64,000 bases of DNA, taken from Paraphysomonas bandaiensis. Taxonomy: Eukaryota > Protista > Chrysophyceae. The notes under the pieces were generated by a model. That model was not told the DNA's origin, searched no databases, and saw nothing but the letters and a program-made list of their open reading frames with translations. How positions within the stretch are numbered: the first letter of the stretch is position 1; each line of letters opens with the position of its first letter. The stretch spans positions 1 through 64,000 of the forward strand of contig CBFFRP010000357.1 in assembly GCA_965644295.1 (NCBI GenBank), written 5' to 3'. This document shows positions 1-57,957 of this stretch, in pieces. The position numbers were made by a program, and so were the translations under genes.

Positions 1-224
1 ACACTGTTGATAGTCCTCACTCGTGTCTGTGAGTAGAGGCAGCAGCAGAGCCTCTGAATCATGTACTCATATATGCATATATCCACATCACATTCACTTC
101 GAAGTCACTCAGAGGTATACACTCATATACGTACACGTATACCTATGTATTTCATAGACACAGTATACAGAGAATACGTTGATTCACAGTTGTAGTAAAA
201 AGTTTCACATATACACTCATTATA

Positions 225-2491
225 TGTATGGACTGCATATGTGAAACTCTGTGGGTTTTTTCCTCATCTAGAAACCCCACCTGTGAAAGGAAATGTTTCA
301 CATATGCCTCGAATACGGACAAAAATATAGTAGATAATCATATTCGATGCATATGTGAAATATTTCCTTTCACAGAAAAACCGGCACTTTTATATGAGGA
401 AACTACAACTTTATAGGGAAATAGCCACTTTATTAGTTGTAAAACACTGTTAAAATACTCTACTATTCTCCTTGAACGTCATATCCGTTAGTGGCATATA
501 TCAATATTCGACCATACTTACTGCAAACATGAGTGAGACAGATTCAGACAGGGAGGAAGCATTGCTTCAATAGTGAAGAGGAAGTGGCCGTATACGCCGA
601 CAGCCGGTTGTGTCTGTTAACTCCAATGCTGATAATGTATCTGACTATAAGATGAAACGAACAAAAGCAGGAATGAAAGCAGCATACTAGAAAAAGGTTG
701 GCCATATTGTAGCGTGGTGTATAACAGCGTACCCTGAAGCTCTGATGATGATGAAAATTTGAAGATTCCATTCCCGAAAGACATCTCTCTTGAGTACTTC
801 GGCCATCTGTTCACACCGGCTCACGAAGGAGCGAAAGAGGGAAGCTAAGGGCCCCAGATGACATTCCAGAAAGTGAACCTGACCCCTCTAGTAGATCCCA
901 CATTAAGGGATATAGAAGCCCTATTGTCTACTTATATACCTTAAGAAATATGAAGCTAGTCGTGGATGTAGTCTTAGACTTAGAACTAAGCCAGGCGATA
1001 GATGGCTATGAGAAAGACATCAATGAACTGAAGAAGGAAGGACTCATGAAACCAGAAGAGGGTAAAAGTCCGTTAAAAATGAATGGCTATAAAATTTTAG
1101 CGACGAATATGATGTTGATGGTTCCCTGTGCTATTGCAGGCAGTTAGTCCTATATCTTGTTCATGTAGGCATATTTTGTACTGATGTGGAATATAATGAG
1201 TAGATCTGATTCAGTAGCTTGATTGATGTTTGAATATTTTGACTGGAGAGGTGATGCAACGCTTGTTCAAGAGCAAGGAGACACAAACTGGACAAAATAG
1301 ACTAGTAATGAAACATTCTCTAGTGCGCTGAATATAATTGTGAATCATATCGTAAGTGTTCATAAGTTAAAGCATATGGATACAGTTTCGTACGGTAGCT
1401 TGTACAATGCAATCTGCAAGTTGAAATGTGTATGGAATTGATAAATGTCACTTCTTTAAATTTAAGCAGTAGAAATCAAACTCTTGACAAACAGCTCTAT
1501 AAGGCTGACAAATATGTATATATGTTGTCCGTAGATATGTTATAACATTATGTGATATACGATATACTTACATCTACATCGGCATCTTCATCTTGATGAA
1601 GGATTAGTAGGCAGCTCTACATTACAGTGTCTGATAAACACTGATAGTAATATATGATATAAGTTGTAAGTAAGTGGTAAGTGGATACGTATGCTATAGC
1701 ATTATGTAATATACGATATACATCCATCTCTTATCTACGACAGCACCTTCATCTTGATGAATGATATATGTAAACCTCAGTCATATTTACAGGACACAAC
1801 AGATCATTACGAATGATAGAGTATTAGGAGTCATATGGTCGACAGGCTCTTCACTGGATGGGTCGTAAGAGGCGTCCCTATACCACATACATATACTCCC
1901 ACCACTTCCACAACTTATCCACACTCTCATACTATTCATATGCTATCCTTATAGAGGAAGTCCTCATATGGATGATCACCACCAGCTCCACTAACAACAG
2001 CGTCACAGTCTTCTAACGGATACTATGCTTCCACAGCACCATTAATGCAGATACACCACATAAAATAACATACTCAGAGGCGCATTAGTGGTGAACGCTT
2101 CTGGTTCAGCTATATGACTATTCAGGGTGCTCCATGCGGTCTATGCATGTATGTGTGTGGGGGTGTTCTGTATGTATGTGTGTGTATCTGCTGCGGTATT
2201 ATTCATATGAACATACGAGTCTCTCTCCTCATGAGGAGCACACACCACTATACACCACTATGACCACACACTGTTGATAGTCCTCACTCGTGTCTGTGAG
2301 TAGAGGCAGCAGCAGAGCCTCTGAATCATGTACTCATATATGCATATATCCACATCACATTCACTTCGAAGTCACTCAGAGGTATACACTCATATACGTA
2401 CACGTATACCTATGTATTTCATAGACACAGTATACAGAGAATACGTTGATTCACAGTTGTAGTAAAAAGTTTCACATATACACTCATTATA
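225..2491 (+). mobile_element. Defective Crypton-type (CryptonS-like) tyrosine-recombinase transposon, copy 1
   Basis: Broken ORF ~530-1300 reads GYEKDINELKKEGLMKPEEGKSPLKMNGYKILA...AYFVLMWNIMSRSDSV..FEYFDWRGDA, resembling the N-terminal half of oomycete/diatom Crypton recombinases. Left end TATGG-ACTGCATATGTGAAACT; right end AGTTTCACATAT(A/G)CACTCATTATA. Contains stops and frameshifts. Confidence 0.8.
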
Positions 2492-4758
2492 TGTATGGAC
2501 TGCATATGTGAAACTCTGTGGGTTTTTTCCTCATCTAGAAACCCCACCTGTGAAAGGAAATGTTTCACATATGCCTCGAATACGGACAAAAATATAGTAG
2601 ATAATCATATTCGATGCATATGTGAAATATTTCCTTTCACAGAAAAACCGGCACTTTTATATGAGGAAACTACAACTTTATAGGGAAATAGCCACTTTAT
2701 TAGTTGTAAAACACTGTTAAAATACTCTACTATTCTCCTTGAACGTCATATCCGTTAGTGGCATATATCAATATTCGACCATACTTACTGCAAACATGAG
2801 TGAGACAGATTCAGACAGGGAGGAAGCATTGCTTCAATAGTGAAGAGGAAGTGGCCGTATACGCCGACAGCCGGTTGTGTCTGTTAACTCCAATGCTGAT
2901 AATGTATCTGACTATAAGATGAAACGAACAAAAGCAGGAATGAAAGCAGCATACTAGAAAAAGGTTGGCCATATTGTAGCGTGGTGTATAACAGCGTACC
3001 CTGAAGCTCTGATGATGATGAAAATTTGAAGATTCCATTCCCGAAAGACATCTCTCTTGAGTACTTCGGCCATCTGTTCACACCGGCTCACGAAGGAGCG
3101 AAAGAGGGAAGCTAAGGGCCCCAGATGACATTCCAGAAAGTGAACCTGACCCCTCTAGTAGATCCCACATTAAGGGATATAGAAGCCCTATTGTCTACTT
3201 ATATACCTTAAGAAATATGAAGCTAGTCGTGGATGTAGTCTTAGACTTAGAACTAAGCCAGGCGATAGATGGCTATGAGAAAGACATCAATGAACTGAAG
3301 AAGGAAGGACTCATGAAACCAGAAGAGGGTAAAAGTCCGTTAAAAATGAATGGCTATAAAATTTTAGCGACGAATATGATGTTGATGGTTCCCTGTGCTA
3401 TTGCAGGCAGTTAGTCCTATATCTTGTTCATGTAGGCATATTTTGTACTGATGTGGAATATAATGAGTAGATCTGATTCAGTAGCTTGATTGATGTTTGA
3501 ATATTTTGACTGGAGAGGTGATGCAACGCTTGTTCAAGAGCAAGGAGACACAAACTGGACAAAATAGACTAGTAATGAAACATTCTCTAGTGCGCTGAAT
3601 ATAATTGTGAATCATATCGTAAGTGTTCATAAGTTAAAGCATATGGATACAGTTTCGTACGGTAGCTTGTACAATGCAATCTGCAAGTTGAAATGTGTAT
3701 GGAATTGATAAATGTCACTTCTTTAAATTTAAGCAGTAGAAATCAAACTCTTGACAAACAGCTCTATAAGGCTGACAAATATGTATATATGTTGTCCGTA
3801 GATATGTTATAACATTATGTGATATACGATATACTTACATCTACATCGGCATCTTCATCTTGATGAAGGATTAGTAGGCAGCTCTACATTACAGTGTCTG
3901 ATAAACACTGATAGTAATATATGATATAAGTTGTAAGTAAGTGGTAAGTGGATACGTATGCTATAGCATTATGTAATATACGATATACATCCATCTCTTA
4001 TCTACGACAGCACCTTCATCTTGATGAATGATATATGTAAACCTCAGTCATATTTACAGGACACAACAGATCATTACGAATGATAGAGTATTAGGAGTCA
4101 TATGGTCGACAGGCTCTTCACTGGTTGGGTCGTAAGAGGCGTCCCTATACCACATACATATACTCCCACCACTTCCACAACTTATCCACACTCTCATACT
4201 ATTCATATGCTATCCTTATAGAGGAAGTCCTCATATGGATGATCACCACCAGCTCCACTAACAACAGCGTCACAGTCTTCTAACGGATACTATGCTTCCA
4301 CAGCACCATTAATGCAGATACACCACATAAAATAACATACTCAGAGGCGCATTAGTGGTGAACGCTTCTGGTTCAGCTATATGACTATTCAGGGTGCTCC
4401 ATGCGGTCTATGCATGTATGTGTGTGGGGGTGTTCTGTATGTATGTGTGTGTATCTGCTGCGGTATTATTCATATGAACATACGAGTCTCTCTCCTCATG
4501 AGGAGCACACACCACTATACACCACTATGACCACACACTGTTGATAGTCCTCACTCGTGTCTGTGAGTAGAGGCAGCAGCAGAGCCTCTGAATCATGTAC
4601 TCATATATGCATATATCCACATCACATTCACTTCGAAGTCACTCAGAGGTATACACTCATATACGTACACGTATACCTATGTATTTCATAGACACAGTAT
4701 ACAGAGAATACGTTGATTCACAGTTGTAGTAAAAAGTTTCACATATACACTCATTATA
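2492..4758 (+). mobile_element. Defective Crypton-type element, copy 2
   Basis: Near-identical to copy 1, offset +2267. Confidence 0.8.
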
Positions 4759-7025
4759 TGTATGGACTGCATATGTGAAACTCTGTGGGTTTTTTCCTCA
4801 TCTAGAAACCCCACCTGTGAAAGGAAATGTTTCACATATGCCTCGAATACGGACAAAAATATAGTAGATAATCATATTCGATGCATATGTGAAATATTTC
4901 CTTTCACAGAAAAACCGGCACTTTTATATGAGGAAACTACAACTTTATAGGGAAATAGCCACTTTATTAGTTGTAAAACACTGTTAAAATACTCTACTAT
5001 TCTCCTTGAACGTCATATCCGTTAGTGGCATATATCAATATTCGACCATACTTACTGCAAACATGAGTGAGACAGATTCAGACAGGGAGGAAGCATTGCT
5101 TCAATAGTGAAGAGGAAGTGGCCGTATACGCCGACAGCCGGTTGTGTCTGTTAACTCCAATGCTGATAATGTATCTGACTATAAGATGAAACGAACAAAA
5201 GCAGGAATGAAAGCAGCATACTAGAAAAAGGTTGGCCATATTGTAGCGTGGTGTATAACAGCGTACCCTGAAGCTCTGATGATGATGAAAATTTGAAGAT
5301 TCCATTCCCGAAAGACATCTCTCTTGAGTACTTCGGCCATCTGTTCACACCGGCTCACGAAGGAGCGAAAGAGGGAAGCTAAGGGCCCCAGATGACATTC
5401 CAGAAAGTGAACCTGACCCCTCTAGTAGATCCCACATTAAGGGATATAGAAGCCCTATTGTCTACTTATATACCTTAAGAAATATGAAGCTAGTCGTGGA
5501 TGTAGTCTTAGACTTAGAACTAAGCCAGGCGATAGATGGCTATGAGAAAGACATCAATGAACTGAAGAAGGAAGGACTCATGAAACCAGAAGAGGGTAAA
5601 AGTCCGTTAAAAATGAATGGCTATAAAATTTTAGCGACGAATATGATGTTGATGGTTCCCTGTGCTATTGCAGGCAGTTAGTCCTATATCTTGTTCATGT
5701 AGGCATATTTTGTACTGATGTGGAATATAATGAGTAGATCTGATTCAGTAGCTTGATTGATGTTTGAATATTTTGACTGGAGAGGTGATGCAACGCTTGT
5801 TCAAGAGCAAGGAGACACAAACTGGACAAAATAGACTAGTAATGAAACATTCTCTAGTGCGCTGAATATAATTGTGAATCATATCGTAAGTGTTCATAAG
5901 TTAAAGCATATGGATACAGTTTCGTACGGTAGCTTGTACAATGCAATCTGCAAGTTGAAATGTGTATGGAATTGATAAATGTCACTTCTTTAAATTTAAG
6001 CAGTAGAAATCAAACTCTTGACAAACAGCTCTATAAGGCTGACAAATATGTATATATGTTGTCCGTAGATATGTTATAACATTATGTGATATACGATATA
6101 CTTACATCTACATCGGCATCTTCATCTTGATGAAGGATTAGTAGGCAGCTCTACATTACAGTGTCTGATAAACACTGATAGTAATATATGATATAAGTTG
6201 TAAGTAAGTGGTAAGTGGATACGTATGCTATAGCATTATGTAATATACGATATACATCCATCTCTTATCTACGACAGCACCTTCATCTTGATGAATGATA
6301 TATGTAAACCTCAGTCATATTTACAGGACACAACAGATCATTACGAATGATAGAGTATTAGGAGTCATATGGTCGACAGGCTCTTCACTGGTTGGGTCGT
6401 AAGAGGCGTCCCTATACCACATACATATACTCCCACCACTTCCACAACTTATCCACACTCTCATACTATTCATATGCTATCCTTATAGAGGAAGTCCTCA
6501 TATGGATGATCACCACCAGCTCCACTAACAACAGCGTCACAGTCTTCTAACGGATACTATGCTTCCACAGCACCATTAATGCAGATACACCACATAAAAT
6601 AACATACTCAGAGGCGCATTAGTGGTGAACGCTTCTGGTTCAGCTATATGACTATTCAGGGTGCTCCATGCGGTCTATGCATGTATGTGTGTGGGGGTGT
6701 TCTGTATGTATGTGTGTGTATCTGCTGCGGTATTATTCATATGAACATACGAGTCTCTCTCCTCATGAGGAGCACACACCACTATACACCACTATGACCA
6801 CACACTGTTGATAGTCCTCACTCGTGTCTGTGAGTAGAGGCAGCAGCAGAGCCTCTGAATCATGTACTCATATATGCATATATCCACATCACATTCACTT
6901 CGAAGTCACTCAGAGGTATACACTCATATACGTACACGTATACCTATGTATTTCATAGACACAGTATACAGAGAATACGTTGATTCACAGTTGTAGTAAA
7001 AAGTTTCACATATGCACTCATTATA
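4759..7025 (+). mobile_element. Defective Crypton-type element, copy 3; ends in (TATG)4
   Basis: Near-identical to copy 1, offset +4534. Right-end IR at 7002-7016 is followed by tatgtatgtatgtatg. Confidence 0.8.
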
Positions 7026-45739: not shown

Positions 45740-48235
45740 TACTGTTCCTAACGGGTGACTGTGTTATGTATGAATGCACTTATACAGAGCCAGTGACTAT
45801 GTGATGAGCTGTGATGTATACATAGAGACTGTGATAGCGGACAGTGCTATATGTATGTATATGTATGTATATGTATGTATATGGGAGATGATACGAGCGA
45901 TCTGTACATACTGCTGTACATACATACCATACCATATATACTGTAGGTATATACCGCATACACGGTACAGAGCACACACATAATCATACATACATAATCA
46001 TATAAAATCCTTCGATTCGAATATCTTTTTTTCTTTTCTTTTCGAATATTCTGTTGAACTTCAATGAGTGAGCTAAAAAAGCGGTAGATTTCCAGAAAAC
46101 CAGTGAATTATATATAAATTGTATTTCGAAAATCCAGTTTTTGAGTCGAAACATGAAACAAAAAACATGGATATTTCATGAAGATGAGCATATTTTTAAG
46201 CTTTTCCAGAAATCTAGAGCTTTTTTGGCCTATCAAGCACACGCTTGTTATAACCTACAGAAAAGAGGACATAAGAGTCGACTATCGCCAGCACCAGCGA
46301 GCCATATGATCAGAGTTCTATTCTTCATTGCATTGATTTCATTTCAAGTGCACTCTATCTCTCATATAGAGACATCTGTGGTCCGTATATCAGACTGAGA
46401 GCTTCAGGAGCATCTATGAACTACATACACATGCACAAACAGCACACTGACATTACACATATAGCTCTAGTCGTCGCAGACACAGGAGGAGTTCTCATGA
46501 TCAATTGAGATCTCATGGGAGATTCCTTCTCTCCCTCTGCCTCGGAAGCATCCACATTCCGTCTTGCAGAAGCCTCCCTCTTCTTATTCCTCGCTATTAG
46601 AGACTTTAGGTCCCTCCTTCGGGCCTGCCATTGTCTCTTCGACTCCTATTTCACGTAGTTTTGCGCACAGTATGTATGTTATTAATGGGGTCCACAAACA
46701 CGATATGAACCAACAGCTACTTATATACAGAGAAGAATAAAGCTGTCCCCACTTGGTGTGCATAGACGATCTTGTATTTCCAATTGGCTTGCAGCAAACT
46801 CTATTGATTATGATAATCAAGAACTGAAAGGCATGTTGGTGGATGTCATACACAATGCATATCAACTGAATAGCAAAGCGAAGGAAGGAACTGATAAATG
46901 CACTATGCACTAACGAGCTAATAATTCCATGTCTCTTCAGACTAGTCGCTTGCTGCTAAGGTTCCAGAAGTAATGGTTGTTACTTCTGCATAAAGTACCG
47001 CTGTAGTTGCGTCACATATCATATTATTACTATTATGTGTAGCTATATATTGCTGTTAGCTATTAACATGATGCGTCTCAGACTTCTTTTAATTTTTAAC
47101 GAAGGGCATTTAATTCATCAAACTCAATATATACTAAGATATTGTGGCTGAGAACTATATATATTTCTAAGTATTACAAGCCGCGAAGGTGACCTTATTA
47201 TAATTAATATTTAATATATATTAGGATTCATCTTTACAGAAGATAATATATGTGAAATATAGAAAATAGTGTTCAATGCAATATATTATTAACTGAATTA
47301 ATGATTGTATCTGTTGGAAGATACTTGATCGTCATCATAACGATCGTCATTGTCAGTTATACTTCTCACTATTCCGTTGTGTGTAATAGTTATGTTCTAC
47401 ATTATTATTCACTCTTTCTACATTACTGTGTTCATCACTTTACATTTTAATATCACAACATACTATTAGAATATGGATTTTATTTTAGTATATTCAGTAT
47501 GTCACTTGAAGACAATATACGAGAATACAGTGAAATATAGTGATGTACAAATGCTGTGATGGTATTGAGAAACTAAAATCAAGATATGTTTAGTAACGAG
47601 AGGTTCACATATGTAGGAGATTATGCGTGGAACAAAATGAGTTTGTCACAACTTCGTGTAAACGATATTAATTAATCTATCTAGTCTAACGACAAATTCT
47701 CTCTGAGATCTAGTTAAGAATGAGCAATTTCCAACACATACTTCCTACTGTTACTAAGCTTAAATCTGCATTATATAATATCTGAAATATACCCAAATTA
47801 AAGAAAAAAGTGAAACAAAGGAAGTTAAGATACCATAGCAGCGAACAAAGAAAATTATAATATTGTAGGCTACAGAATATCAGTACTCTACCAGCAAACT
47901 ATATGCTCGAGTCACTTTAGCGCCATTTTTGACCTCGTTCTCTGCATGTTTTTAGAAGTACTCAAAGCAACAAAACGAGCGGATGCAGGGGTAATACAGA
48001 TTTACAAACTCACAACGTATGTGTAGTGTCTGTAACCATAACTGAATGCATCAGGATCAATGCGTTATTAAAATTCACTTTCACACACTAACTTTCTTAA
48101 ATTTCAAAACGATTCATACCTTCACACCATACGGACCGTTCGTAAGTTCAGCCCTACACTGATGTACCTATGTTAAACCAACAACATTTTCATATGTTCC
48201 AACTGTTCATATCAGCTATCTACATCACATTAGGT

Positions 48236-51200
48236 CTACTTTGCCTCAATCAGCGCTTTAACCATATTTCTTAGCTCTTCGTTTTCCTTGGCTAATTTTT
48301 CCATGTCCCTTCGCAAAACATCTATGTCACGTTTAAATTCTTGAGCATCGTCCTCTGGTAGATGTAATGGCTTCGTAGACGTGCATTTGCATTCATCACG
48401 CAGCTCTTTAATAGCTTCGCCAAGGACAGCAACGGCACGGGAGTAGGCAACATGCTTGTACCCTTGAGCATCCTCTTCCACCAGTTCAGGGATCACCGAC
48501 TCTACTTCATCCGCAATCCACCCCATCTGAGGCTGATCAGAAAACTTTCTGTCAGGGTACTCATCGACTTTGTTGTCATAAGTGACCTGCCATGATACAG
48601 CATGAAAAGAAATATAAAATATGAGAAGGCTAGCAGTGCAATACGTACCCCTCTCAGAGACGAAACCATATCAAGTGCACCAGATATAGTCGAAATATTA
48701 GTTTTAAACCTTCGATCCGAACTGTCATAGTAAGGCCCAGACCCAGATACTGTTCCACGAACCGTTAGAGACCCTTCAATGTGTACATTACTCCCAAACT
48801 CTGCAGGGCCAGATGTAGAGAGGCCTTCCGCTGTCAATTCAACGGCTGAAATTCTCGCATCTGTGATAGTAGCGGTCTTCAGTTGCGCCCTGTCTAGGAC
48901 AACCTCACCATCATCGTCAATATGAGAGATGCGGGCCACTTTAAGTACGCCACTCTTAGTGATTTCGACTTTATTGCTGTGTCCGATTAAACCAGTCCCC
49001 TACATGAAAATATATTTAATCACTGAACAAATATCACTGCAATAGTTTAAGACTTACATCCTGAACGACAATGTGGCCGCCGTTCTGAACTGCGTTGGAA
49101 CTCAAGTACACATTCGAATTCTTTACAGAGGATGACTCAATAATGGCCTCAGTAATCTTGTTTCCATCGAGTGAAACATCGTCCCGTAAAGAAGTGATTT
49201 TCAGCTCCAAGTTTCCGTCTTTACCCACATTGACGCCATCCACAGCAATTATGTCACCGGCCCCGTCAGTGGCTAGCAAGGATGAACGAACATTAGGCAA
49301 CTTCATCGACCCCACAGTGGCTGATCCATCGATGGTTAACTCTTTCCGGATTGTCAGAGTAGGCACAGAGGGTTCGTTAGTCGGCCTCAAGTAGCCTTGC
49401 CTATCTATAGATATCAAAAGACCCTCCTCAACCTGGGTGTCATCGCCAATTATTCTGTAACCTCCCGCTGAGAGCAAGCCGTCCACACTGAGCTTGTTAA
49501 AAGAGCCCTGTGAAGCGGACACAGACCCCACAGTGGAGTGGGATGATACCTTTCCGTCCGCACCCACAACCAAGAGCTCTGCGCCAGCTCTCTGAGTTTT
49601 GGAATCCAAAATGAGGGACTGTGCATTGACAACACCAATGTGAGCATCACCAGCAACATTAATACTCTCCGCCTTCATACTGTCAGTATGAAGATTCGAT
49701 GACGTGGAAACTGTTCCAGCCTCGTCAACACTGAGCACACCTACACCCAGTTTCTTTAGCTCCAACTGTGCCGCGGAAACTCGGCCTTCCACCATTAAAC
49801 TATCAGCCCGTACGGATCCCAGGGAAGAGTCAGAGGCGGGCACCACCTTACCATTGGCATCAACTGACAGTACAGATGACTTCATTCCAGTCAACTGAAG
49901 GGATTGCATAGAGGCTGTGCCCAACACATTCAGGTCATCGGACGACACACTCTGTACAGTGATTGAGGAAGCTGGTACAACTCGCCCCATCTCATCCGCC
50001 CGTAAGAGCGTGGAGACCACATCTGACCGCAGCTCTGACGCAGACATGACTCCAGAGAATGTTGCCTCTTTCGCTGTAATTGAATTCACGTCAATATCAC
50101 CGGATACAGTTACAGCTCCTTGGGTATCACTGGTCAACACTCCGCCGGGCTGGGACGACGAAAAGGAGAGTGCAGCCAGTACAGCGGTGCCTCCTACGGT
50201 TAGTCCATCCGCGACATTAACATTCGTCACAGATATAGTGTCGGCTACTGACACGCTGCCCTCATTCGATGTCAACACGCCACTCGGAGCGGTGAAATCC
50301 TTTCCCCCGTGTATACGTAACGACGCAAACGACCCATGCCCAGAAATAACCTTCGCAGTGGTCAGAGAATCAACTTCGAGCGTATCAGCCGATGATACGT
50401 AACCCTCAGCATCCACCGCAAGAAGAGTAGACTGCAGCCCTCCAAGACGAACAGTATTAAATGCACCTTCATTTGCCGTTAATGACTTCGATAGTGAAAT
50501 GCTGTTAAGAGAGATATCCGCTTCACTAGATACACCACCCTTTGAATCTGACATAAGAACACCTTCAGTTGTGAGTCCAGAAATTGAAAGGGATGCCAGT
50601 GTAGCCGCATCTTCTACATTCAGCGTCTTCGAGAACACAGTATCAACATGCACTGTCGGCACGGAAGAAACTAAGCCGTCTTTATCAGCCATCAGGACAC
50701 CGGATTCAGAACCTAATAATTGAACTGACCCAGCCGAAAGCTTACCCCTCACCGTGCTAATATCTGTAGTTATAGACGTAAGTTCTGCGTTTTCAGTGCT
50801 AACTACTTCGCCAGTAGCAGTTCCCATAAGCATTCCTGCCTCCTTAAGCCCCGTTATCGACAACCCTTGTACAGTGGCACTCTCAGATTTAACACTTGTG
50901 AACGAAGCGTCTGTCGCAGGCACTACTTTGCCCTTCGAATCAACAGCAAGTACTGAAGACGAAACGGTCGCTAGCTCTAACTGAGAGAGAGAGGCAGCGC
51001 CAGTGACAGCTAAGGTCCCTGTTTCAACATTATCGAGAGTAGCAGACTTCGTGGCAATAACTGTGCCCTTGCTGTCCGTAGAAAGCAAAGCTGATTGAAT
51101 TCCAGATAGTTCCAATAGTTCAGTTCTAGCATGCTTGAACGAACCTCCTGCTGCCTCAACTACGGCATCCCTAATAATTGCACCATTGGCCACCACTAAC

Positions 51201-54200
51201 TCTCCTTTCCCATCCACACCTACAATAGTGACAGTTGAGTCTTTCGCCGCTTTCTGTGTTGAAGCATCTAAGTGAACAGACTTCAAAGAAGCACCAGAGA
51301 GCGTAGCCCCCGTCATGTCAACCAAATTAGACACCATGATAGACTCAGCAGATATCGAGGAGAGTCCAACTGCCACTCCGCCAGCAATAGACACATTACT
51401 CAGCGTATTACCATTGAAATCCACGGCCCCACTTTGAGCATAAGATCCAAGCTTCGAAACGTGCAACGTATTGTCGTAAAAACTCATAGATGAATCAAAT
51501 CCAATCTCTCCGGACGCAGTAACATGGACAATGCCACCAGCAGATGGCTCATCACCAAGGAATAGATGTCTAATAGTCGCACGATCCACTCCTTCTATAG
51601 ACTCAACCGACATGGATTTCGCATTTCGAATATTGAATTCATGGAAGTCAATATCATCCCATAAATCAGTGATTTTCAACTGACCCTCTTCTGACAACGC
51701 AACTGACGGAGAAGCTTTGAGCAATCCATTCTGATTGAAATACGCAATACCAGAAGCCTTTGACAGAGTGATATCTGTGGCGACTATACTAGCATCATGG
51801 ATGATTGACTTCGCAATCACCGCATTCCTGAAAATATACTTATATAAAATAGACAGTGGAAAAACACACTTACGAAATGGTCTTGGACTTGGCATCCACG
51901 TCAGCTTCCAATGTTGTAAACTTCAAGCCCGGAGCTGAGAGTACTCCATTCATGTAGGACAAGCCAGAGCGACCACGCAATAGACCTCCGACACCCCCCA
52001 CTACAATCTCTCCTCGGTTCAGTGACGAAAGCTTAAATCCTCCCGCCTCAATAGTGTAGTTGCCAATATTGATATCATTTGCCACTTCGAATTTCTTTAC
52101 ATTGGAAATCGAATCAAGTGGAGCCGCAAGAGCCTGCACGTCAACCCACCGAGAGCCATCGTAAACCAGCATGACAGTACAGTCCACAGGAATATGCAGC
52201 TCCCCCCCACCCGTAGTAGCCCGTACAACAGAATTGTCACTGTTATGAATAATTATAATCTGACCTTCAAAAGCGCCGTCAGGGCGGGTTGGTAGTGTTG
52301 CAATATTAGCTTTCTCTGATTTATCGTCTTGAATATCAACAAATGATGCATCGAAGGGGATGGAAATGGAGTCCCCAGCACTCAGAAGTAGTTTAGCAAC
52401 AGAAACACCTCCTTTCATACGGGCGTGCTCATTGACCTCTAACCCACTCGCCGTGGTAATACTACCTGCCGTCTTAAGGCTTCCATCACCACCAACAGAA
52501 AAGACTCCCTTGTCATTGACTTTTGCATCGATGAGACTGAAGTCATCTTCATTCGACTGCATATCTATTACAAAAGCGTTGCCAGTAAAATCTCCATTGG
52601 AATACTCAACAACGAGAAGAGGTGCGGCCGCATCATCACCTGACGCATGCAGTGACTTCGCACTTAGTTTTGTATTTTCTAATGACAGTCCGCCGGATGC
52701 GACAGATAATCCACCTTGCACAAACAAACCACCAGAAGAGATATGTACTCCACCGGAATCAATCTCTAGGCCTCCCGAAAACATTCTTACACCTGCTAGA
52801 GACAGATTCCCCCGTGAGGTCAAGTCAAATGTCGTCACACCGTCTACAATCCCGCGGATCATGCTCGAATTATCACCAGTGATAGCGTTGATTTCTAGCA
52901 GAGAACCGTTAAATTGCTCCTGCCCGGATCGTAGCTCCAGCAAAGGGCCACTGTGTCTAAAAACAATATTATCAAGAACACAAGTCGTAATTGATAGGAT
53001 ATTGATGCAACAAGGTATTCCAATGTAGACAAATATAAAAAAATCGAAATTTTACCACACATTTTGCAACGTACTTGTTCGTATCAATGGTCATTCCCTC
53101 AGGATTAAGTGCAAAGCCTGAACCAATTGTGAGGGAGTCTTCAACAACTGCAGAGCCGTGTACATCAAGAGAGTTCACAATATTGATACTCTGTGCGGTC
53201 ACAAGGCCATCCTCGACAGCAAATGACTCATTAGCTGCAGTGAGTTTCCCGATTGTGTGGATATCACCACCACCAGTGATGTTCAGCACACCCATCGTAC
53301 GGAGAGGAGACACCTCCCCCGCAGTATTCAGCGTTCGAGGAGCAAAAGTGCGCAACTCCAAATGTGTATCCGACAACTGCGCAGCGGTACTCATAACCTG
53401 CACACCAACACATAACCAAAGCAGTATTCATGGCCATATACAATTCCTATACCATTACGGAGGAGCTGGTGTCCCGCGTCTCCGCGTGATTTTTCGACGG
53501 TTCTAAGCTCAAGAGTGTGGAGCCTTTCGCCGGTAGTTCCATCCCAACAGCCCCAGTAACTCCCATGTCGCCATTGTGAATGAACTTTTTATCACCGCGA
53601 ATTGTGGTCACAGGGCGTTGCAAGTCGCCCTCACTATACGACAGTGCGGCTTGGAAGAAGTTAAACTTTTCCGAGTATGAGCGCACCGCCACAGCTTTGA
53701 GAACAGTTCCGGTAAAGAAAGGTCCATCGTGCGTCACGACAGTATCATCCTGAAGTGTGATGCAAAGTTAAAGGGATGAGGCAACACACAACTAAACTGA
53801 TGTCGAACTTCCAAAATACGTGCACACAAGGAAATATACAACGCGCAGTACATAGGTGGTAAGTACCTTTGTGTCAGTTGTGTCATCACAGGCAGGGCCA
53901 TGGAAGCCTCGGTCACAAATACAACTTCCAATGCGCATGTCACAAGTTCCATGATTTCCACACTCATAGTATCCTATAATCATAGTACTCAAAAATAACA
54001 CGAAGAATATGTTTGGCAAAAGCATACACCAACCGCACCTGGTACATTCTCTGCTACAACATCAGTAACTTCACAATATGGTTCGATAGCCTTGAATTCA
54101 TCGACACGATCCACATTACAACCAAATGCGCTCAAGGGAGGGTTTCCTGAATGGTTGAACAAATTGTTCTCGAACGGAGTTGTGGACCAAGAATTGAATG

Positions 54201-54732
54201 TTATCAAATAAGAATACGAGGAGGTTTGTTCCGCGCCAATTCGTTCATTAACACAGGTTGCATCTCCAACGCCTTGCATTTTACGCACAATTCGGGTGCA
54301 TTCTTCGGACGATAAATTGTCAGGGTTGGCATCAAGTAGCACTTGTGCACCGTTGTAAGTCAAGGCCGCCCGGCCTTCAAGTTTTCCCGATTCACGACCG
54401 ATAGTGAGTCGAATTGCTCGACGTGGCATATCATCCGTAACAGTTGTAGCATCAAATGCTTTGGGGCATATACCTGTGTACCATCTCATTATTATGAGCA
54501 TATAGTGTATATACAGCACTCACGTCTCGAGCAGTCCGCTCCAGTGTATCCATTATTACATATACAATACCCCGCATCTCCAGGATCTGTACACACACCA
54601 TTCTTGCTACACCAATTCATACATCTGTATATAATATGAGCTCTATCCGTGTGTAGTGGGAGATGATAGATAGACATACCTTGCATGAGCAGTTGCAGCC
54701 CATAAGATGCTTATTAATGCGGTTAATTTCAT
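48236..54732 (-). CDS. Secreted ~1950-aa protein: signal peptide, EGF/tenascin-like domains, long beta-repeat fibre region, C-terminal peptidase S74 intramolecular chaperone domain and coiled coil; ~10 exons
   Basis: Exon 1 MKLTALISILWAATAHA; CMNWCSKNGVCT...CICNNGYTGADCS; ECGNHGTCD...CICDRGFHGPAC; repeats like L.L.G..S.LL..D..G.V; SSDRRFKTNI...LRGV...MGWIADEVESVIPELV...HVAYSRAVAVLGEAIKEL. Confidence 0.9.
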
Positions 54733-55280
54733 AATAATCGAGTGATATTAAATAAACATACGTGTATATAGTAGAGAGTGTGTTTGTATTAGTATATCAT
54801 CCATATGACGCAGATTGAGAGGAGTGTGTTAATGTTATTCCAGTATGCTATGCACACAGACACACACATACATACATATGCAGACTAGCGTACACACGCA
54901 TCAGTGGATACTGCTGTATGTATGTACAGTATGATCCACTGCATCAACACAACTCTACGTGTGTTTTCATATAAAAAATCTAGAGGAGATTTTGAAATCA
55001 TTTACACCAGTACGAACTCCGTACATTGAAATATCAGAAGAAATATCAATGAACACCTAAAACCCATAGTTTTTTTCTATGAAAACTTCTAATATCTACA
55101 GTTTGTAACCAAATCCCTACTATTTAGCGTGTTAGAATATGGACTAAACTAAGCAGTGTGATAGATCAGAGATGTACGGCAGATGCCATATGTTACCATC
55201 TCACCTCCCTCTCCTTAATATCATCACATCACAATATACCATACATACATAACATACTCCATACTATTCCCTTATATACC

Positions 55281-57957
55281 ATGATATCATCATACAGTTT
55301 ATGTCCGCTATTAATCCTGTTGTTTGTTAGTGTAACTGTTGCTAAGAGAGTCACGTATGACTCCTCATTACCACACCCCTCACACATACTGCCATTACAT
55401 CAACAGCCCTTTCGACACAATAGACGTTTATCATCTGCAGAGTTAGCCCCATTATATCCAGGATATGGAACACATATATCTTATATATATGTGGGTACAC
55501 CTGCACAGCGACAGTCTGTTATTATCGACACGGGCAGCTCCTACACTGCATTCCCCTGCATAGGCTGTAAGGACTGTGGACAACACACAGATCATTATTT
55601 TGATCCAAAAAATTCATCAACTGCTGTAATTCCGAAATGTGGGAAATCTGTTTGTTCGATATCACAGTCATACTCTGAGGGAAGCTCCTGGAAGGCGTAC
55701 AAAGTGACAGACAAACTCTGGGTAGGCGGACTTACAGAAGGGCTTGTAAAAGATGCTCAAAATTTGGCTATTGACTTCCTATTCGGCTGTCAGACGAGTG
55801 AGACAGGACTATTTCGCTCGCAATTGGCAGATGGTATTATGGGTATGTCCCGATCAGCCTCAACTCTTGTCCCTCAGCTGTATGAGCACAAAGTTGTCGA
55901 CTCCAAAATTTTTGGATTATGCTTTCGTATCGGAGGTGGAATTATGACCCTAGGCGGGATAGATCAGCGCATTCATTCATCCGACATTTTGTATGCGAAG
56001 ATATATCCGAGTTCCTCGAACTGGTTCACTGTGCGTCTGTTGGAACTAGCATTGGTGGAAAACACAGTGAAAAAGGAAGTGCACATCGTAAGCTCCTCGG
56101 CTAGTATTCTCAATTCTGGTAGTGGAGTTATCATTGACTCGGGTACAACGGACACCTACTTACCCTCTCGTCTTAGTGCTGATTTCGTAAGGGCTTTTGA
56201 ATTAGCCACTGGGATTAAGTACAGTAACAAGCCCATGACTCTGACCGCCAAACAAATTGAAAAGTTACCCAACATTCGAATCAAACTCCAAGGGGTTTCT
56301 GGACATGATGATGATGTAGTAGAACTCATAATGCCGCTGAGTAGCTATGCAGACACCGATGGCAAGGGCAAATATACATTCAGAGTGTATTTGACAGAAT
56401 CTTCCGGAGGAGTACTTGGAGCGAATTTTATGCGCGGTATGAATATTATTTTCGACGACTATCACCAGAAGGTTGGATTCGCTTCCTCGTCGTGTCGCTA
56501 TGAGGATTACGAGGACATAGAAGTTACTCCCCCTGCGTCAGTGTTTACGATGCCCCCCATCCCTGCTCCTGTGCCATTGCCTGTAGATTCGAACAACTGT
56601 ACTCTGTCACCGACTGGGTATTGCACTGCCACATGTCGTAGGAACGTTGGTACGAAGCCTAAACCCTACGTTATGCTGGGAAATCAATCTTTTTTCGATG
56701 ATTGCACATTTAAAGAGATTCAAAAACCCTGCAGGGAGTTCTGTCGCAGTGATAACACGATCGCCCGCGGGCCGTCATTGAAGTGTCTTAACACAGTGTG
56801 GTCGGAGTGTGACCATCATTGCAAGCAGACTCGCATGGTCGCCACAGGAAACGAGAAGAAATGTAAGATGAAGAAGGAAGTACGATCTTGCACCACCGAC
56901 AACTGTCCAAAGAACTTGGAGGACTTTTTTGTGCTAGCGGACTTGAAATTTTGGTTTCCACCTGTAGTGCCACCTGGCAAATGGGACAAGATATATGAGG
57001 AGGATCTATTCACTGCTCTATCAAAAATTCTGGAGGTACGTTATGTTGCGATGATTACGTACTTGTTTCGAATTGTTGTATTTGCTGGGTTAGTGTTATA
57101 TCTTTGCAAATGTGCATCGTGAGATTAGATTGCAACATCGTCAATGCGTGCTGCAGTTGTTCTTATTTATCATTAGGTGCCTGTCGGCAATATGGACTTG
57201 TTAGTGGATATGGAGGCTGATAGCAGTGATAGCTCATTTCGTCGACTTTCTTATAAGCGGTTCGTAAAACTCCAGCTTCAGGTCTTCATATCACGCGCGG
57301 CATATCCCCGCGTGGAGTACTTCAACAACCAAGTGCAATACGTTTTGGATATTTTGAATCTACCCAGTCTTAAATTCGGTGAGCTGGTTATGCCAATATT
57401 GAATGAAATTTGTGCAGAGCGTGACGGAGGTCGTGTTATCCGTTATGCAGCTTTGTTTCCCGAGGATATAGTGGTTCAACGAGCAGTGGCGCTCCCTATG
57501 AGTAATCAACGCGATCCTTTCAACATTCCTAATGCCGTACCGTCCGCAACTACCACTTCTGATTCTGCCGGAGGACTGTCGATGAACGAATACTTTCTTA
57601 TCGGTATTGCTCTAGGCGCTGTGGTGATAATGATTGTAGTATTGGTGATGTACTACCGCCTAAAACTGGAGCATGCTGCACTGGCAAAAGACAAGTCCAT
57701 ATCTGGTGGGACATCTATGGTGCAGATGTGGAACAGGTGAGTGCATGTGTGTATGCCCATCATGTTAAGAATACTAGTGTTGTGTTTTTTATGTTTAAAC
57801 TCCTGTCCACAGGCTTAAAGCAGCAGACAGTCGACGTACCACACGGGCCAATCCTCAGATGTTTCCCTCTGCCGATGCTGGCAGTAGTCGTGGGCTAATG
57901 GCCGCCGCAAATGACGATAGTGACGACGAAAATGACAGTGAGTTTGGTCTCAAATAG
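55281..57957 (+). CDS. A1 aspartic protease, plasmepsin V/ASP5-like, with Cys-rich (TSP1-like) region and C-terminal TM; exons 55281-57035, 57177-57736, 57813-57957
   Basis: Signal peptide; IIDTGSSYTAFPCIGCKDCGQH; SYSEGS; FGCQ..ETGLF..Q.ADGIMG; IIDSGTT; LGANFM; WSECDHHC; TM YFLIGIALGAVVIMIVVLVMYY. Confidence 0.92.

What the first reader, a model, noticed from the sequence alone, without database searches (positions are those of the whole stretch)
48236..54732. Eukaryotic secreted protein built like a phage tail fibre (EGF head, beta-repeat shaft, self-cleaving S74 chaperone)
The C-terminus has the S-D-x-R-x-K catalytic motif (SSDRRFKTNI) of the intramolecular chaperone that trimerises phage tailspikes and fibres and then cleaves itself off. 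In eukaryotes it is best known from MYRF/MrfA transcription factors. Here it ends ~1500 aa of G/S/V/T/D-rich ~35-45-aa repeats, and the N-terminus has a signal peptide and an EGF-CP-...-EGF module resembling stramenopile mastigoneme proteins (Ocm1/Sig1 type). About nine spliceosomal introns show it is a resident host gene. Inference: a virus-like trimeric fibre used as an extracellular filament (flagellar hair filament, stalk, or prey-capture adhesin).
Basis: partly seen in the sequence, partly recalled or inferred. Interest (0 to 1): 0.85.

Follow-up and report, generated by a model that had tools for sequence, protein, structure and literature searches.

The report
Flagellar-hair-headed, phage-style self-cleaving fibre gene
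A golden-alga relative (Paraphysomonas) expresses a secreted 1,956-residue protein that joins a module of its flagellar-hair proteins to a long rod ending in the self-removing folding cap that phages use for tail fibres. This makes it a good but untested candidate for the thin filaments on those hairs.

Summary
Window 48236-54732 (minus strand) holds one 10-exon, 9-intron gene with a 5,871-nt coding sequence (1,956 aa).

- **Transcript support:** a public Paraphysomonas transcript (MMETSP1103; P0186/L009) matches it at 1,953 of 1,956 residues and lacks all nine introns. The locus is one expressed host gene.
- **Architecture:** signal peptide; an EGF / alpha-beta cysteine domain / EGF head; a neck with a phage-tailspike-type beta-sandwich; about 15 repeats of about 45 aa; Peptidase_S74 (50.1 bits; Ser1817/Lys1822); a terminal coiled coil.
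- **Head:** it is collinear with tubular mastigoneme proteins (hhalign 98.4%, E 9.8e-15).
- **C-terminus:** it matches phage long-tail-fibre ends (up to 46% identity) far better than MYRF.
- **Trimer model:** three copies of the last 274 shaft residues score ipSAE 0.73 against a best control of 0.00. This supports trimerisation but does not show it.
- **Family:** four members in this genome, all with both head and S74, plus Mallomonas and metagenomic homologues. One orthologue lies next to a canonical mastigoneme gene.

Best reading: a secreted homotrimeric fibre folded and then released by its S74 cap. A role as a mastigoneme lateral or terminal filament is plausible but unproven.

The scan had already reported three paralogues on other DNA of this genome. 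I found no paper describing the family.

The parts
48051..54811 (-). Whole transcript: 5'UTR 54811-54733, CDS 54732-48236 in 10 exons, 3'UTR 48235-48051
   Evidence: cDNA contig L009 aligned to the window; exon model
54680..54732 (-). Exon 1: start codon and signal peptide MKLTALISILWAATAHA
   Evidence: Sequence read directly; identical to P0186 residues 1-17
54524..54624 (-). Exon 2: first EGF-like domain
   Evidence: Pfam EGF 25.7 bits, EGF_Tenascin 25.7 bits
54039..54473 (-). Exon 3: 144-aa alpha/beta cysteine domain of the head, opening with the CPKAFD motif
   Evidence: AF2 pLDDT 74, pTM 0.71. Only 4 copies in the genome, all in S74 genes. Aligns to the central domain of mastigoneme proteins within the head profile
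53867..53973 (-). Exon 4: second EGF-like domain; the mastigoneme-like module ends here
   Evidence: Pfam EGF_2 34 bits; aligns to the C-terminal EGF of mastigoneme proteins
53075..53749 (-). Exons 5-6 (53749-53453, 53397-53075): conserved start of the neck (HDGPFFTGT motif)
   Evidence: 45-69% identity to P0002 and P0007
51874..52956 (-). Exon 7: neck, with short Gly-rich strand repeats and an inserted beta-sandwich
   Evidence: 41-51% identity among homologues; AF2 monomer is poor overall, pLDDT 41
52116..52403 (-). Phage-tailspike-type beta-sandwich (exon 7 residues 185-280; protein residues ~624-719)
   Evidence: VIA-align Z 10.8, rmsd 2.1 A, 87 aligned residues to the phage Solidus tailspike depolymerase C-terminus; Z 9.8 to CBA120 TSP4. 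Weak Pfam Phage_depo_C match. Local pLDDT 58-77
49058..51827 (-). Exon 8: shaft, 923 aa, Ser/Val/Leu/Gly/Ala-rich
   Evidence: only 31 hits among 1.84 billion representative proteins
49277..51226 (-). About 15 repeats of about 45 aa, each with a VL-x-x-D-x-x-G-x-V motif
   Evidence: Autocorrelation peaks at lags 45 and 91; motif spacing 40-55 aa
49058..49879 (-). Last 274 aa of the shaft, modelled as a homotrimer
   Evidence: ipSAE 0.73 against a best control of 0.00; pLDDT 82; about 1,450 contacts; the three runs agree in at least 96% of their contacts
48649..48999 (-). Exon 9: pre-chaperone strand region plus the first half of Peptidase_S74 (from 48720). Ser1817 codon 48720-48718; Lys1822 codon 48705-48703
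   Evidence: Pfam profile positions 1-25; PHROGs tail-fibre families; alignments to 6F45 and MYRF 7DC3
48479..48586 (-). Exon 10, first part: second half of Peptidase_S74
   Evidence: Pfam profile positions 26-57; collinear PHROGs matches; the homologue in L001 is uninterrupted here
48236..48373 (-). C-terminal coiled coil and stop codon
   Evidence: Weak coiled-coil Pfam matches; heptad-like sequence; a helical tail is also present in paralogues and orthologues

Best explanation
The gene encodes a secreted protein that most likely forms a homotrimeric extracellular fibre.

Proposed steps:
1. The signal peptide takes the chain into the ER.
2. The C-terminal Peptidase_S74 intramolecular chaperone and its coiled coil bring three chains into register. 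They nucleate folding of the upstream strand-rich shaft (about 15 repeats of 45 aa) and neck.
3. The Ser1817/Lys1822 dyad cuts off the ~140-residue cap. This leaves a ~1,800-residue (~186 kDa per chain) mature fibre.
4. The N-terminal end carries three copies of a disulphide-rich EGF / alpha-beta domain / EGF module homologous to tubular mastigoneme proteins. My preferred reading is that this head docks onto, or co-assembles with, the mastigoneme tube, so that the fibre projects as a lateral or terminal filament.

Shown here: gene structure, transcription, domain content, catalytic motif, homology of the head and the cap, and family conservation.
Modelled: trimerisation.
Inferred: cleavage, secretion and location.
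For: - One spliced mRNA: the cDNA lacks all 9 introns, and 1,953 of 1,956 residues are identical.
- S74 scores 50.1 bits at residues 1817-1876, with S-D-R-R-F-K. It aligns to the phage S16-type long tail fibre 6F45 (E 1.3e-5) and to the MYRF ICA domain at the catalytic positions.
- 606 phage records match the C-terminus; the best is 46% identity to cyanophage long tail fibres. PHROGs tail-fibre matches are collinear across intron 9.
- Shaft trimer model: ipSAE 0.73 against a best control of 0.00, partner pLDDT 82, with interface stretches spaced about 45-52 residues apart and same-residue contacts between copies. This mark was reached by 21 of 30 proteins solved as pairs of one chain and 0 of 23 solved as single chains, in a calibration that used two copies rather than three.
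- Head profile against the tubular mastigoneme family: 98.4% probability, E 9.8e-15, 208 columns. That family includes an NCBI-named tubular mastigoneme protein.
- Distant member P0192 carries the full mastigoneme N-terminal EGF array (E 9e-35).
- All 4 copies of the head domain in the genome lie in S74-terminated genes.
- Orthologue L002 keeps the exon plan and lies tail-to-tail with a canonical mastigoneme gene.
- There is a full-length homologue in Mallomonas.
- Ochromonas mastigonemes carry lateral filaments of two sizes and 1-3 terminal filaments (PMC2108286).
Against: - No localisation, proteomic or cleavage data exist.
- The trimer result is a model's confidence only, and it may partly reflect remembered phage fibres.
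- Much of the head-profile score comes from the EGF cysteine patterns. The central domain alone scored only 2.9% probability (P 0.016).
- In this genome the gene is not next to a mastigoneme gene, so the adjacency rests on a single locus.
- The taxonomic range beyond chrysophytes and synurophytes was not established.
- Read-level RNA evidence could not be obtained.
Confidence: 0.75

Rival explanations
1. It is the same S74-matured trimeric fibre, but it is used elsewhere on the cell surface. Possible roles are tethering the siliceous scales of Paraphysomonas, forming a stalk or adhesive thread, or capturing prey. In this reading the mastigoneme-like head is just a reused EGF adhesion module.
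For: - The architecture does not specify a location.
- The gene is not adjacent to mastigoneme genes in this genome.
- EGF modules are general extracellular interaction domains.
- The head fold also resembles many diatom and oomycete EGF-protein clusters.
Against: - The head is collinear with the mastigoneme family across EGF, central domain and terminal EGF.
- P0192 has the whole mastigoneme N-terminal array.
- In L002 the fibre gene is adjacent to a mastigoneme gene.
- The named homologues come from flagellates with tripartite hairs.
Confidence: 0.3
2. It is a MYRF-like membrane-tethered factor, in which the S74 domain trimerises and releases an N-terminal signalling or transcription fragment.
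For: MYRF is the best-known eukaryotic user of this domain, and the MYRF ICA structure 7DC3 aligns weakly (E 0.13).
Against: - Pfam finds no Ndt80-type DNA-binding domain.
- No transmembrane segment follows the S74 domain; only one marginal hydrophobic 19-mer exists, and it lies inside the shaft.
- An N-terminal signal peptide and 16 head cysteines point to the secretory lumen.
- The cap is much closer to phage fibre caps than to MYRF: 28.3 against 15.2 bits in the same search.
Confidence: 0.02
3. It is viral or bacterial DNA: phage contamination, a giant-virus insertion or a recent transfer, rather than a working host gene.
For: - The C-terminal ~150 aa and the neck beta-sandwich are phage-like.
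- Language-model neighbours of exon 7 are viral clusters, though only as a weak lead (score 0.90, 149 shared features).
Against: - Nine spliceosomal introns are removed in a transcript from a eukaryotic transcriptome.
- EGF and mastigoneme-type domains are eukaryotic.
- Exon plan and an aspartic-protease neighbour are conserved in L002.
- The flanking genes are host genes.
- The shaft has no phage relative.
- An ancient capture of a phage fibre cap remains likely as the origin, not as the present state.
Confidence: 0.02

Closest known systems
Phage long tail fibres and tailspikes with a C-terminal intramolecular chaperone (endosialidase CIMCD / Peptidase_S74; e.g. the T4-like long tail fibre distal subunit, PDB 6F45)
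   Same: - C-terminal S74 domain with the Ser/Lys motif, followed by helices.
- 46% identity over ~110 aa to cyanophage fibres.
- A tailspike-type beta-sandwich in the neck.
- A long repetitive rod that models as a trimer.
   Different: - It is a spliced eukaryotic gene with a signal peptide.
- The N-terminus is an EGF/mastigoneme module, not a virion anchor.
- The shaft repeats have no detectable phage homologue.
Stramenopile tubular mastigoneme proteins (Sig1/Ocm1/PnMas family, ~360-410 aa)
   Same: The head is collinear with residues ~100-387 of these proteins: EGF, the C-S-x-R-x-C-P-x-x-x-D link, a central domain, and a terminal Y-E-C EGF. Distant family members keep the whole N-terminal array.
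   Different: - Mastigoneme proteins end right after the last EGF. This protein continues for ~1,720 residues of fibre and chaperone.
- The window protein lacks the first two EGF units.
- Homology of the central domain on its own is not significant.
TLP-12 glycofibril candidates of alveolates (CryoSeek preprint, 10.1101/2025.09.30.679562)
   Same: A eukaryotic extracellular fibril made of three chains, whose candidate proteins end in an ICA (S74) domain proposed to fold a triple beta-helix.
   Different: TLP-12 candidates have dodecapeptide repeats, are alveolate, and have no mastigoneme-type head. Here the repeats are ~45 aa and the lineage is Chrysophyceae.
MYRF / MrfA membrane-bound transcription factors
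   Same: Eukaryotic use of the S74/ICA domain for trimerisation and self-cleavage; the catalytic positions align.
   Different: There is no DNA-binding domain and no transmembrane helix after the ICA domain. The product is secreted rather than nuclear, and the similarity is weak (E 0.13).
Paralogues in the same genome (contigs C664, C297, C427; earlier scan findings s1-445062, s1-440724, s1-455840)
   Same: Same head domain (33-38% identity) and an S74 end.
   Different: - Head-to-S74 spans differ: 4.4 kb and 14.5 kb, against 5.8 kb here.
- Their S74 domains are not split by an intron.
- C664 keeps more of the mastigoneme EGF array.

Membership tests
Peptidase_S74 / intramolecular chaperone auto-processing domain proteins | Match to Pfam PF13884 above the gathering score | tested here: met
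   50.1 bits against a cut-off of 22 on P0186 residues 1817-1876. On the exons, 20.8 and 19.5 bits for collinear halves
Peptidase_S74 / intramolecular chaperone auto-processing domain proteins | Catalytic Ser, with Lys five residues downstream (S-D-x-R-x-K) | tested here: met
   Ser1817 and Lys1822 in SDRRFK. They align to the same positions in 6F45 and MYRF 7DC3 and are conserved in all paralogues and orthologues
Peptidase_S74 / intramolecular chaperone auto-processing domain proteins | Sits at the C-terminal end of a trimeric fibrous region | tested here: inconclusive
   The position is met. Trimer formation is supported only by a model: ipSAE 0.73 against a best control of 0.00
Peptidase_S74 / intramolecular chaperone auto-processing domain proteins | Autoproteolytic release of the domain after folding | not testable with these tools
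   Needs mass spectrometry or a western blot of the native or recombinant protein
Stramenopile tubular mastigoneme proteins (Sig1/Ocm1/PnMas) | Collinear EGF array, central domain and terminal EGF | tested here: met
   hhalign 98.4%, E 9.8e-15, head 10-229 against mastigoneme residues 100-387 of 390. The first two EGF units are absent. The central domain alone is not significant
Stramenopile tubular mastigoneme proteins (Sig1/Ocm1/PnMas) | Protein of about 360-410 aa that ends after the last EGF | tested here: not met
   1,956 aa, with ~1,720 residues following the last EGF. It is therefore not filed as a member, only as carrying a homologous module
Stramenopile tubular mastigoneme proteins (Sig1/Ocm1/PnMas) | Located on the flagellar hairs | not testable with these tools
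   Needs immuno-EM or proteomics of isolated mastigonemes
MYRF-type membrane-bound transcription factors | Ndt80-type DNA-binding domain before the ICA domain and a transmembrane helix after it | tested here: not met
   No such Pfam domain. No transmembrane-grade segment after residue 1876
Phage tail fibre / tailspike genes | Encoded in a phage or prophage genome among tail genes | tested here: not met
   Nine spliceosomal introns, a eukaryotic transcript and host neighbours
TLP-12-type alveolate glycofibril proteins | Concentrated dodecapeptide repeats before the ICA domain | tested here: not met
   The repeat period is about 45 aa. The description of TLP-12 comes from the preprint

The most novel reading that the evidence does not exclude
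This family supplies the hitherto unidentified thin filaments of chrysophyte tripartite flagellar hairs. Trimeric S74-matured fibres would dock by their mastigoneme-type heads onto the tubular shaft. The discrete paralogue lengths in this genome (head-to-S74 spans of 4.4-5.8 kb and 14.5 kb) would then correspond to the two size classes of lateral filaments, and/or the terminal filaments, described for Ochromonas in 1971. That would mean a defining structure of stramenopiles was built with a folding device captured from phage tail fibres.
Probability: 0.35. Interest if true: 0.85.

Novelty: new variant of a known kind. Interest (0 to 1): 0.68.

Why it matters
Tripartite flagellar hairs define the stramenopiles and reverse the thrust of the flagellum. 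Only the tube proteins (Sig1/Ocm/PnMas) are known to me. In the library searched I found no paper on the protein make-up of the lateral and terminal filaments, and none linking S74 domains to stramenopiles or mastigonemes.

A gene family that fuses the tube-protein module to a self-cleaving trimeric fibre gives a concrete, testable candidate for those filaments.

It also adds a second eukaryotic lineage, after the alveolate TLP-12 candidates, in which the phage fibre chaperone appears to build extracellular fibres rather than to release a transcription factor.

Tried and rejected
- **RNA reads:** No read-level RNA evidence was obtained and read laying was not used. Transcript evidence came from the database transcript L009/P0186 instead.
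- **Joined exons:** Exons were searched one by one by reference. Full-length analyses used protein P0186, which a search returned.
- **Head search, short proteins:** a word-based search with a homologue's head (P0002:1-260) found one hit, so it said little.
- **Head central domain alone** against mastigoneme proteins gave only 2.9% probability. The full head profile was needed.
- **Head fold against the PDB:** Foldseek found nothing significant. The VIA best match, Z 9.2 to a Bxb1 tail-tip protein, is within the usual background, and I draw no conclusion from it.
- **Exon 7 as a monomer** folded poorly (pLDDT 41). Only the beta-sandwich at residues 185-280 is usable.
- **Shaft (exon 8)** had no PDB, Pfam or PHROGs sequence match.
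- **Atlas neighbours of exon 7** are viral, but below the reliability marks.
- **Paper searches** for Ocm/PnMas names returned unrelated papers. Armbrust 1999 is not held.
- **Rejected readings:** a MYRF-like factor and a viral or contaminant origin (see rivals).
Full report
**Gene structure**

The finding lies on the minus strand. Reading the sequence and checking each exon in its own phase gives ten exons:
- 54732-54680
- 54624-54524
- 54473-54039
- 53973-53867
- 53749-53453
- 53397-53075
- 52956-51874
- 51827-49058
- 48999-48649
- 48586-48236

The nine introns are all GT-AG and 46-118 nt long. The exons sum to 5,871 nt, which is 1,956 codons plus a stop, and no exon has an in-frame stop.

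Exons were searched singly by reference.

**Transcript evidence**

A search seeded with a homologue (P0002) returned P0186. This is a 1,956-aa complete ORF from transcriptome MMETSP1103 of Paraphysomonas, taxid 36769.
- Exon translations 1-7 and 9 occur in it exactly, at the predicted offsets.
- Exon 8 differs at two residues and exon 10 at one.
- The five split-codon residues (R18, R52, G197, K439, S800) are as predicted.

Its cDNA contig L009 is 6,135 nt with the ORF at 80-5950. It aligns to window 54811-48051 with all nine introns absent, which gives a 79-nt 5'UTR and a 185-nt 3'UTR.

Comparative evidence agrees:
- P0002 is a single 2,269-aa ORF collinear with exons 3-8. A 217-aa ORF holding an uninterrupted equivalent of exons 9 and 10 follows it.
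- P0019 spans the end of exon 8, exon 9 and exon 10 without a break.

**Domain content, from N- to C-terminus**

1. Signal peptide: residues 1-17, judged by inspection only.
2. Head: residues 18-232, with 16 cysteines.
   - EGF in exon 2.
   - A 144-aa domain in exon 3.
   - EGF in exon 4.
   - The exon-3 domain folds as an alpha/beta sandwich (AF2 pLDDT 74, pTM 0.71). It has no convincing PDB counterpart.
   - It resembles predicted folds in diatom proteins and in EGF-rich oomycete proteins (TM 0.5-0.65).
3. Neck: residues 233-800 (exons 5-7), conserved at 41-69% identity among homologues.
   - The monomer model is poor overall (pLDDT 41).
   - Exon-7 residues 185-280 (local pLDDT 58-77) match phage tailspike and fibre beta-sandwiches: Z 10.8, rmsd 2.1 A over 87 residues to the phage Solidus depolymerase C-terminus, and Z 9.8 to CBA120 TSP4.
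   - Six rows reach Z 8 or more, and five of them are phage proteins.
   - Weak Pfam Phage_depo_C matches in this protein and in P0007 agree with this.
4. Shaft: residues 801-1723 (exon 8). It is rich in Ser, Val, Leu, Gly and Ala.
   - Autocorrelation peaks at lags 45 and 91.
   - About 15 units of 40-55 aa each start with a VL-x-x-D-x-x-G-x-V motif.
   - It has no Pfam, PHROGs or PDB sequence match.
   - It has only 31 relatives among 1.84 billion representative proteins.
5. Cap: residues 1817-1956.
   - Peptidase_S74 scores 50.1 bits at 1817-1876.
   - On the exons it appears as two collinear halves either side of intron 9.
   - Ser1817 and Lys1822 lie in S-D-R-R-F-K.
   - The best solved relative is a phage long tail fibre distal subunit, 6F45 (E 1.3e-5, 28.3 bits). 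MYRF 7DC3 scores 15.2 bits in the same search.
   - PHROGs tail-fibre families match exons 9 and 10 collinearly at their C-terminal ends.
   - 606 phage records match; the best is 46% identity over ~110 aa to long tail fibres of T4-like cyanophages.
   - A coiled coil ends the protein.
   - No transmembrane-grade segment follows the S74 domain.

**Is the head of mastigoneme type?**

- The orthologous locus L002 keeps the same exon plan, the same intron inside S74 and the same aspartic-protease neighbour as the window.
- Tail-to-tail with its fibre gene, L002 carries a 390-aa EGF protein. That protein has 2,124 relatives. They include one that NCBI names tubular mastigoneme protein of Ochromonadaceae sp. 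CCMP2298 (58% identity) and a Paraphysomonas transcript (71%).
- The exon-3 domain alone, compared with this family, is not significant (2.9%, P 0.016).
- A profile of the whole head from nine full-length family members aligns collinearly with mastigoneme residues 100-387 of 390. The probability is 98.4% and E is 9.8e-15 over 208 columns. EGF cysteine patterns carry much of that score.
- More specific support comes from the distant member P0192. It is homologous to the window protein through head and neck (28% over 515 aa, E 4e-38) and ends in S74. It also carries the complete mastigoneme N-terminal array: 34% identity over 204 aa (E 9e-35), including non-EGF spacers.

I conclude that the family's head is a homologue of the mastigoneme protein module, and that the window copy lacks the first two EGF units. 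It is not a mastigoneme protein in the family sense, because those proteins end after the last EGF.

**Family**

In this 62.6-Mb genome the exon-3 domain occurs four times: in the window and on contigs C664, C297 and C427. All four copies lie upstream of an S74 domain. The head-to-S74 spans are 5.8, 4.4, 14.5 and 14.5 kb.

The canonical mastigoneme genes lie elsewhere, on C281, C17, C265, C69 and C363.

Full-length homologues with EGF plus S74 include Mallomonas annulata P0188 (32% identity over 1,732 aa) and several metagenomic proteins of 1,763-2,598 aa. One homologue comes from a marine metatranscriptome catalogue.

The scan had already reported the three paralogues on other DNA. Those notes led me to expect Paraphysomonas and a mastigoneme link, and I tested both independently here. 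Their claim that the family reaches oomycetes was not tested.

**Trimer test**

Three copies of the last 274 shaft residues were folded three times.
- Score: ipSAE 0.73 in each run, against 0.00 for the best of three controls.
- Partner pLDDT was at least 81, and the runs agreed in at least 96% of their contacts.
- The interface stretches are spaced about 45-52 residues apart, close to the repeat length.
- The tightest contacts include the same residue in two copies (49, 103, 156, 202). I read this as chains running in parallel and in register; that is my inference.

The tool's calibration: 21 of 30 proteins solved as pairs of one chain reached the mark, and 0 of 23 solved as single chains did. 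That calibration used two copies, not three, and a pass may reflect remembered complexes. This supports trimerisation but does not show it.

**Mechanism**

The established behaviour of S74 domains is that they trimerise, template the upstream triple-stranded fold and then cut themselves off at the conserved Ser with the Lys as base. This is summarised in the CryoSeek preprint with its references; the rest is my own knowledge of endosialidase and MYRF work.

On that basis I propose ER entry, C-terminal nucleation of a three-chain fibre, and self-cleavage at Ser1817. That would yield a ~186-kDa-per-chain fibre with three mastigoneme-type heads at one end. Cleavage, secretion and location are inferred.

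By rough analogy with T4 long tail fibres (my own knowledge), the fibre would be of the order of 100 nm long and the 14.5-kb paralogues several times longer.

Bouck (1971) described Ochromonas mastigonemes with lateral filaments of two sizes and one to three terminal filaments, the lateral ones being added in the Golgi. The match to paralogue size classes is suggestive only.

**Literature and novelty**

I found no paper that combines S74 or the intramolecular chaperone with stramenopiles or mastigonemes. I found no structure of a stramenopile tubular mastigoneme.

The nearest precedent is the alveolate TLP-12 glycofibril, whose candidate proteins end in an ICA domain.

I rate this a new variant of a known kind. 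The folding device and fibre logic are known. What appears undescribed is the fusion to a mastigoneme module in a conserved chrysophyte family. Because three paralogues were already reported by this scan, this window adds a well-documented fourth member with full transcript support rather than a first discovery.

Noticed in passing
window 55158-57122 (+): The divergent neighbour ~425 bp upstream of the fibre gene is a pepsin-type aspartic protease ORF with an N-terminal hydrophobic segment and a Cys-rich C-terminal extension. The same Asp-protease neighbour sits beside the orthologous fibre gene in L002, so the pair is syntenic.
   Followed up: partly
L002:10421-11593 (-): A canonical 390-aa tubular mastigoneme gene lies tail-to-tail, ~560 bp from the orthologous fibre gene, in a related organism. 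This adjacency is not kept in the window's genome.
   Followed up: yes
G000 contig C616:101260-165201: Five Peptidase_S74 matches lie on one strand within ~64 kb, reported inside a single open frame of 34,637 aa. An earlier scan note reads this as a giant fibre polyprotein with internal S74 domains. I did not check it, and a run of N could also explain the open frame.
   Followed up: no
G000 contig C641:5184-5363 (-): There is a further S74 domain in a 2,466-aa open frame, with no detectable exon-3-type head domain in the genome search. This may be a different S74 fibre family.
   Followed up: no
G000 contig pairs C281/C17, C265/C69, C212/C410, C358/C235, C23/C132, C78/C296, C297/C427: Mastigoneme-like and fibre genes come in near-identical pairs on different contigs. 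This suggests that the assembly keeps both haplotypes or a recent duplication.
   Followed up: no
P0010 cluster: A metagenomic protein family of about 780 aa matches the start of exon 8 at 27% identity. JGI annotates it as a bactofilin-family cytoskeletal protein, CcmA, on contigs up to 181 kb. It may be a prokaryotic or viral relative of the shaft's N-terminal module.
   Followed up: no
window exon 3 model (54039-54473): The head alpha/beta domain's best solved-structure neighbours are mycobacteriophage Bxb1 tail-tip and capsid-associated chains (Z 9.2 and 8.2). These values are within the usual background, so the match may be chance.
   Followed up: partly
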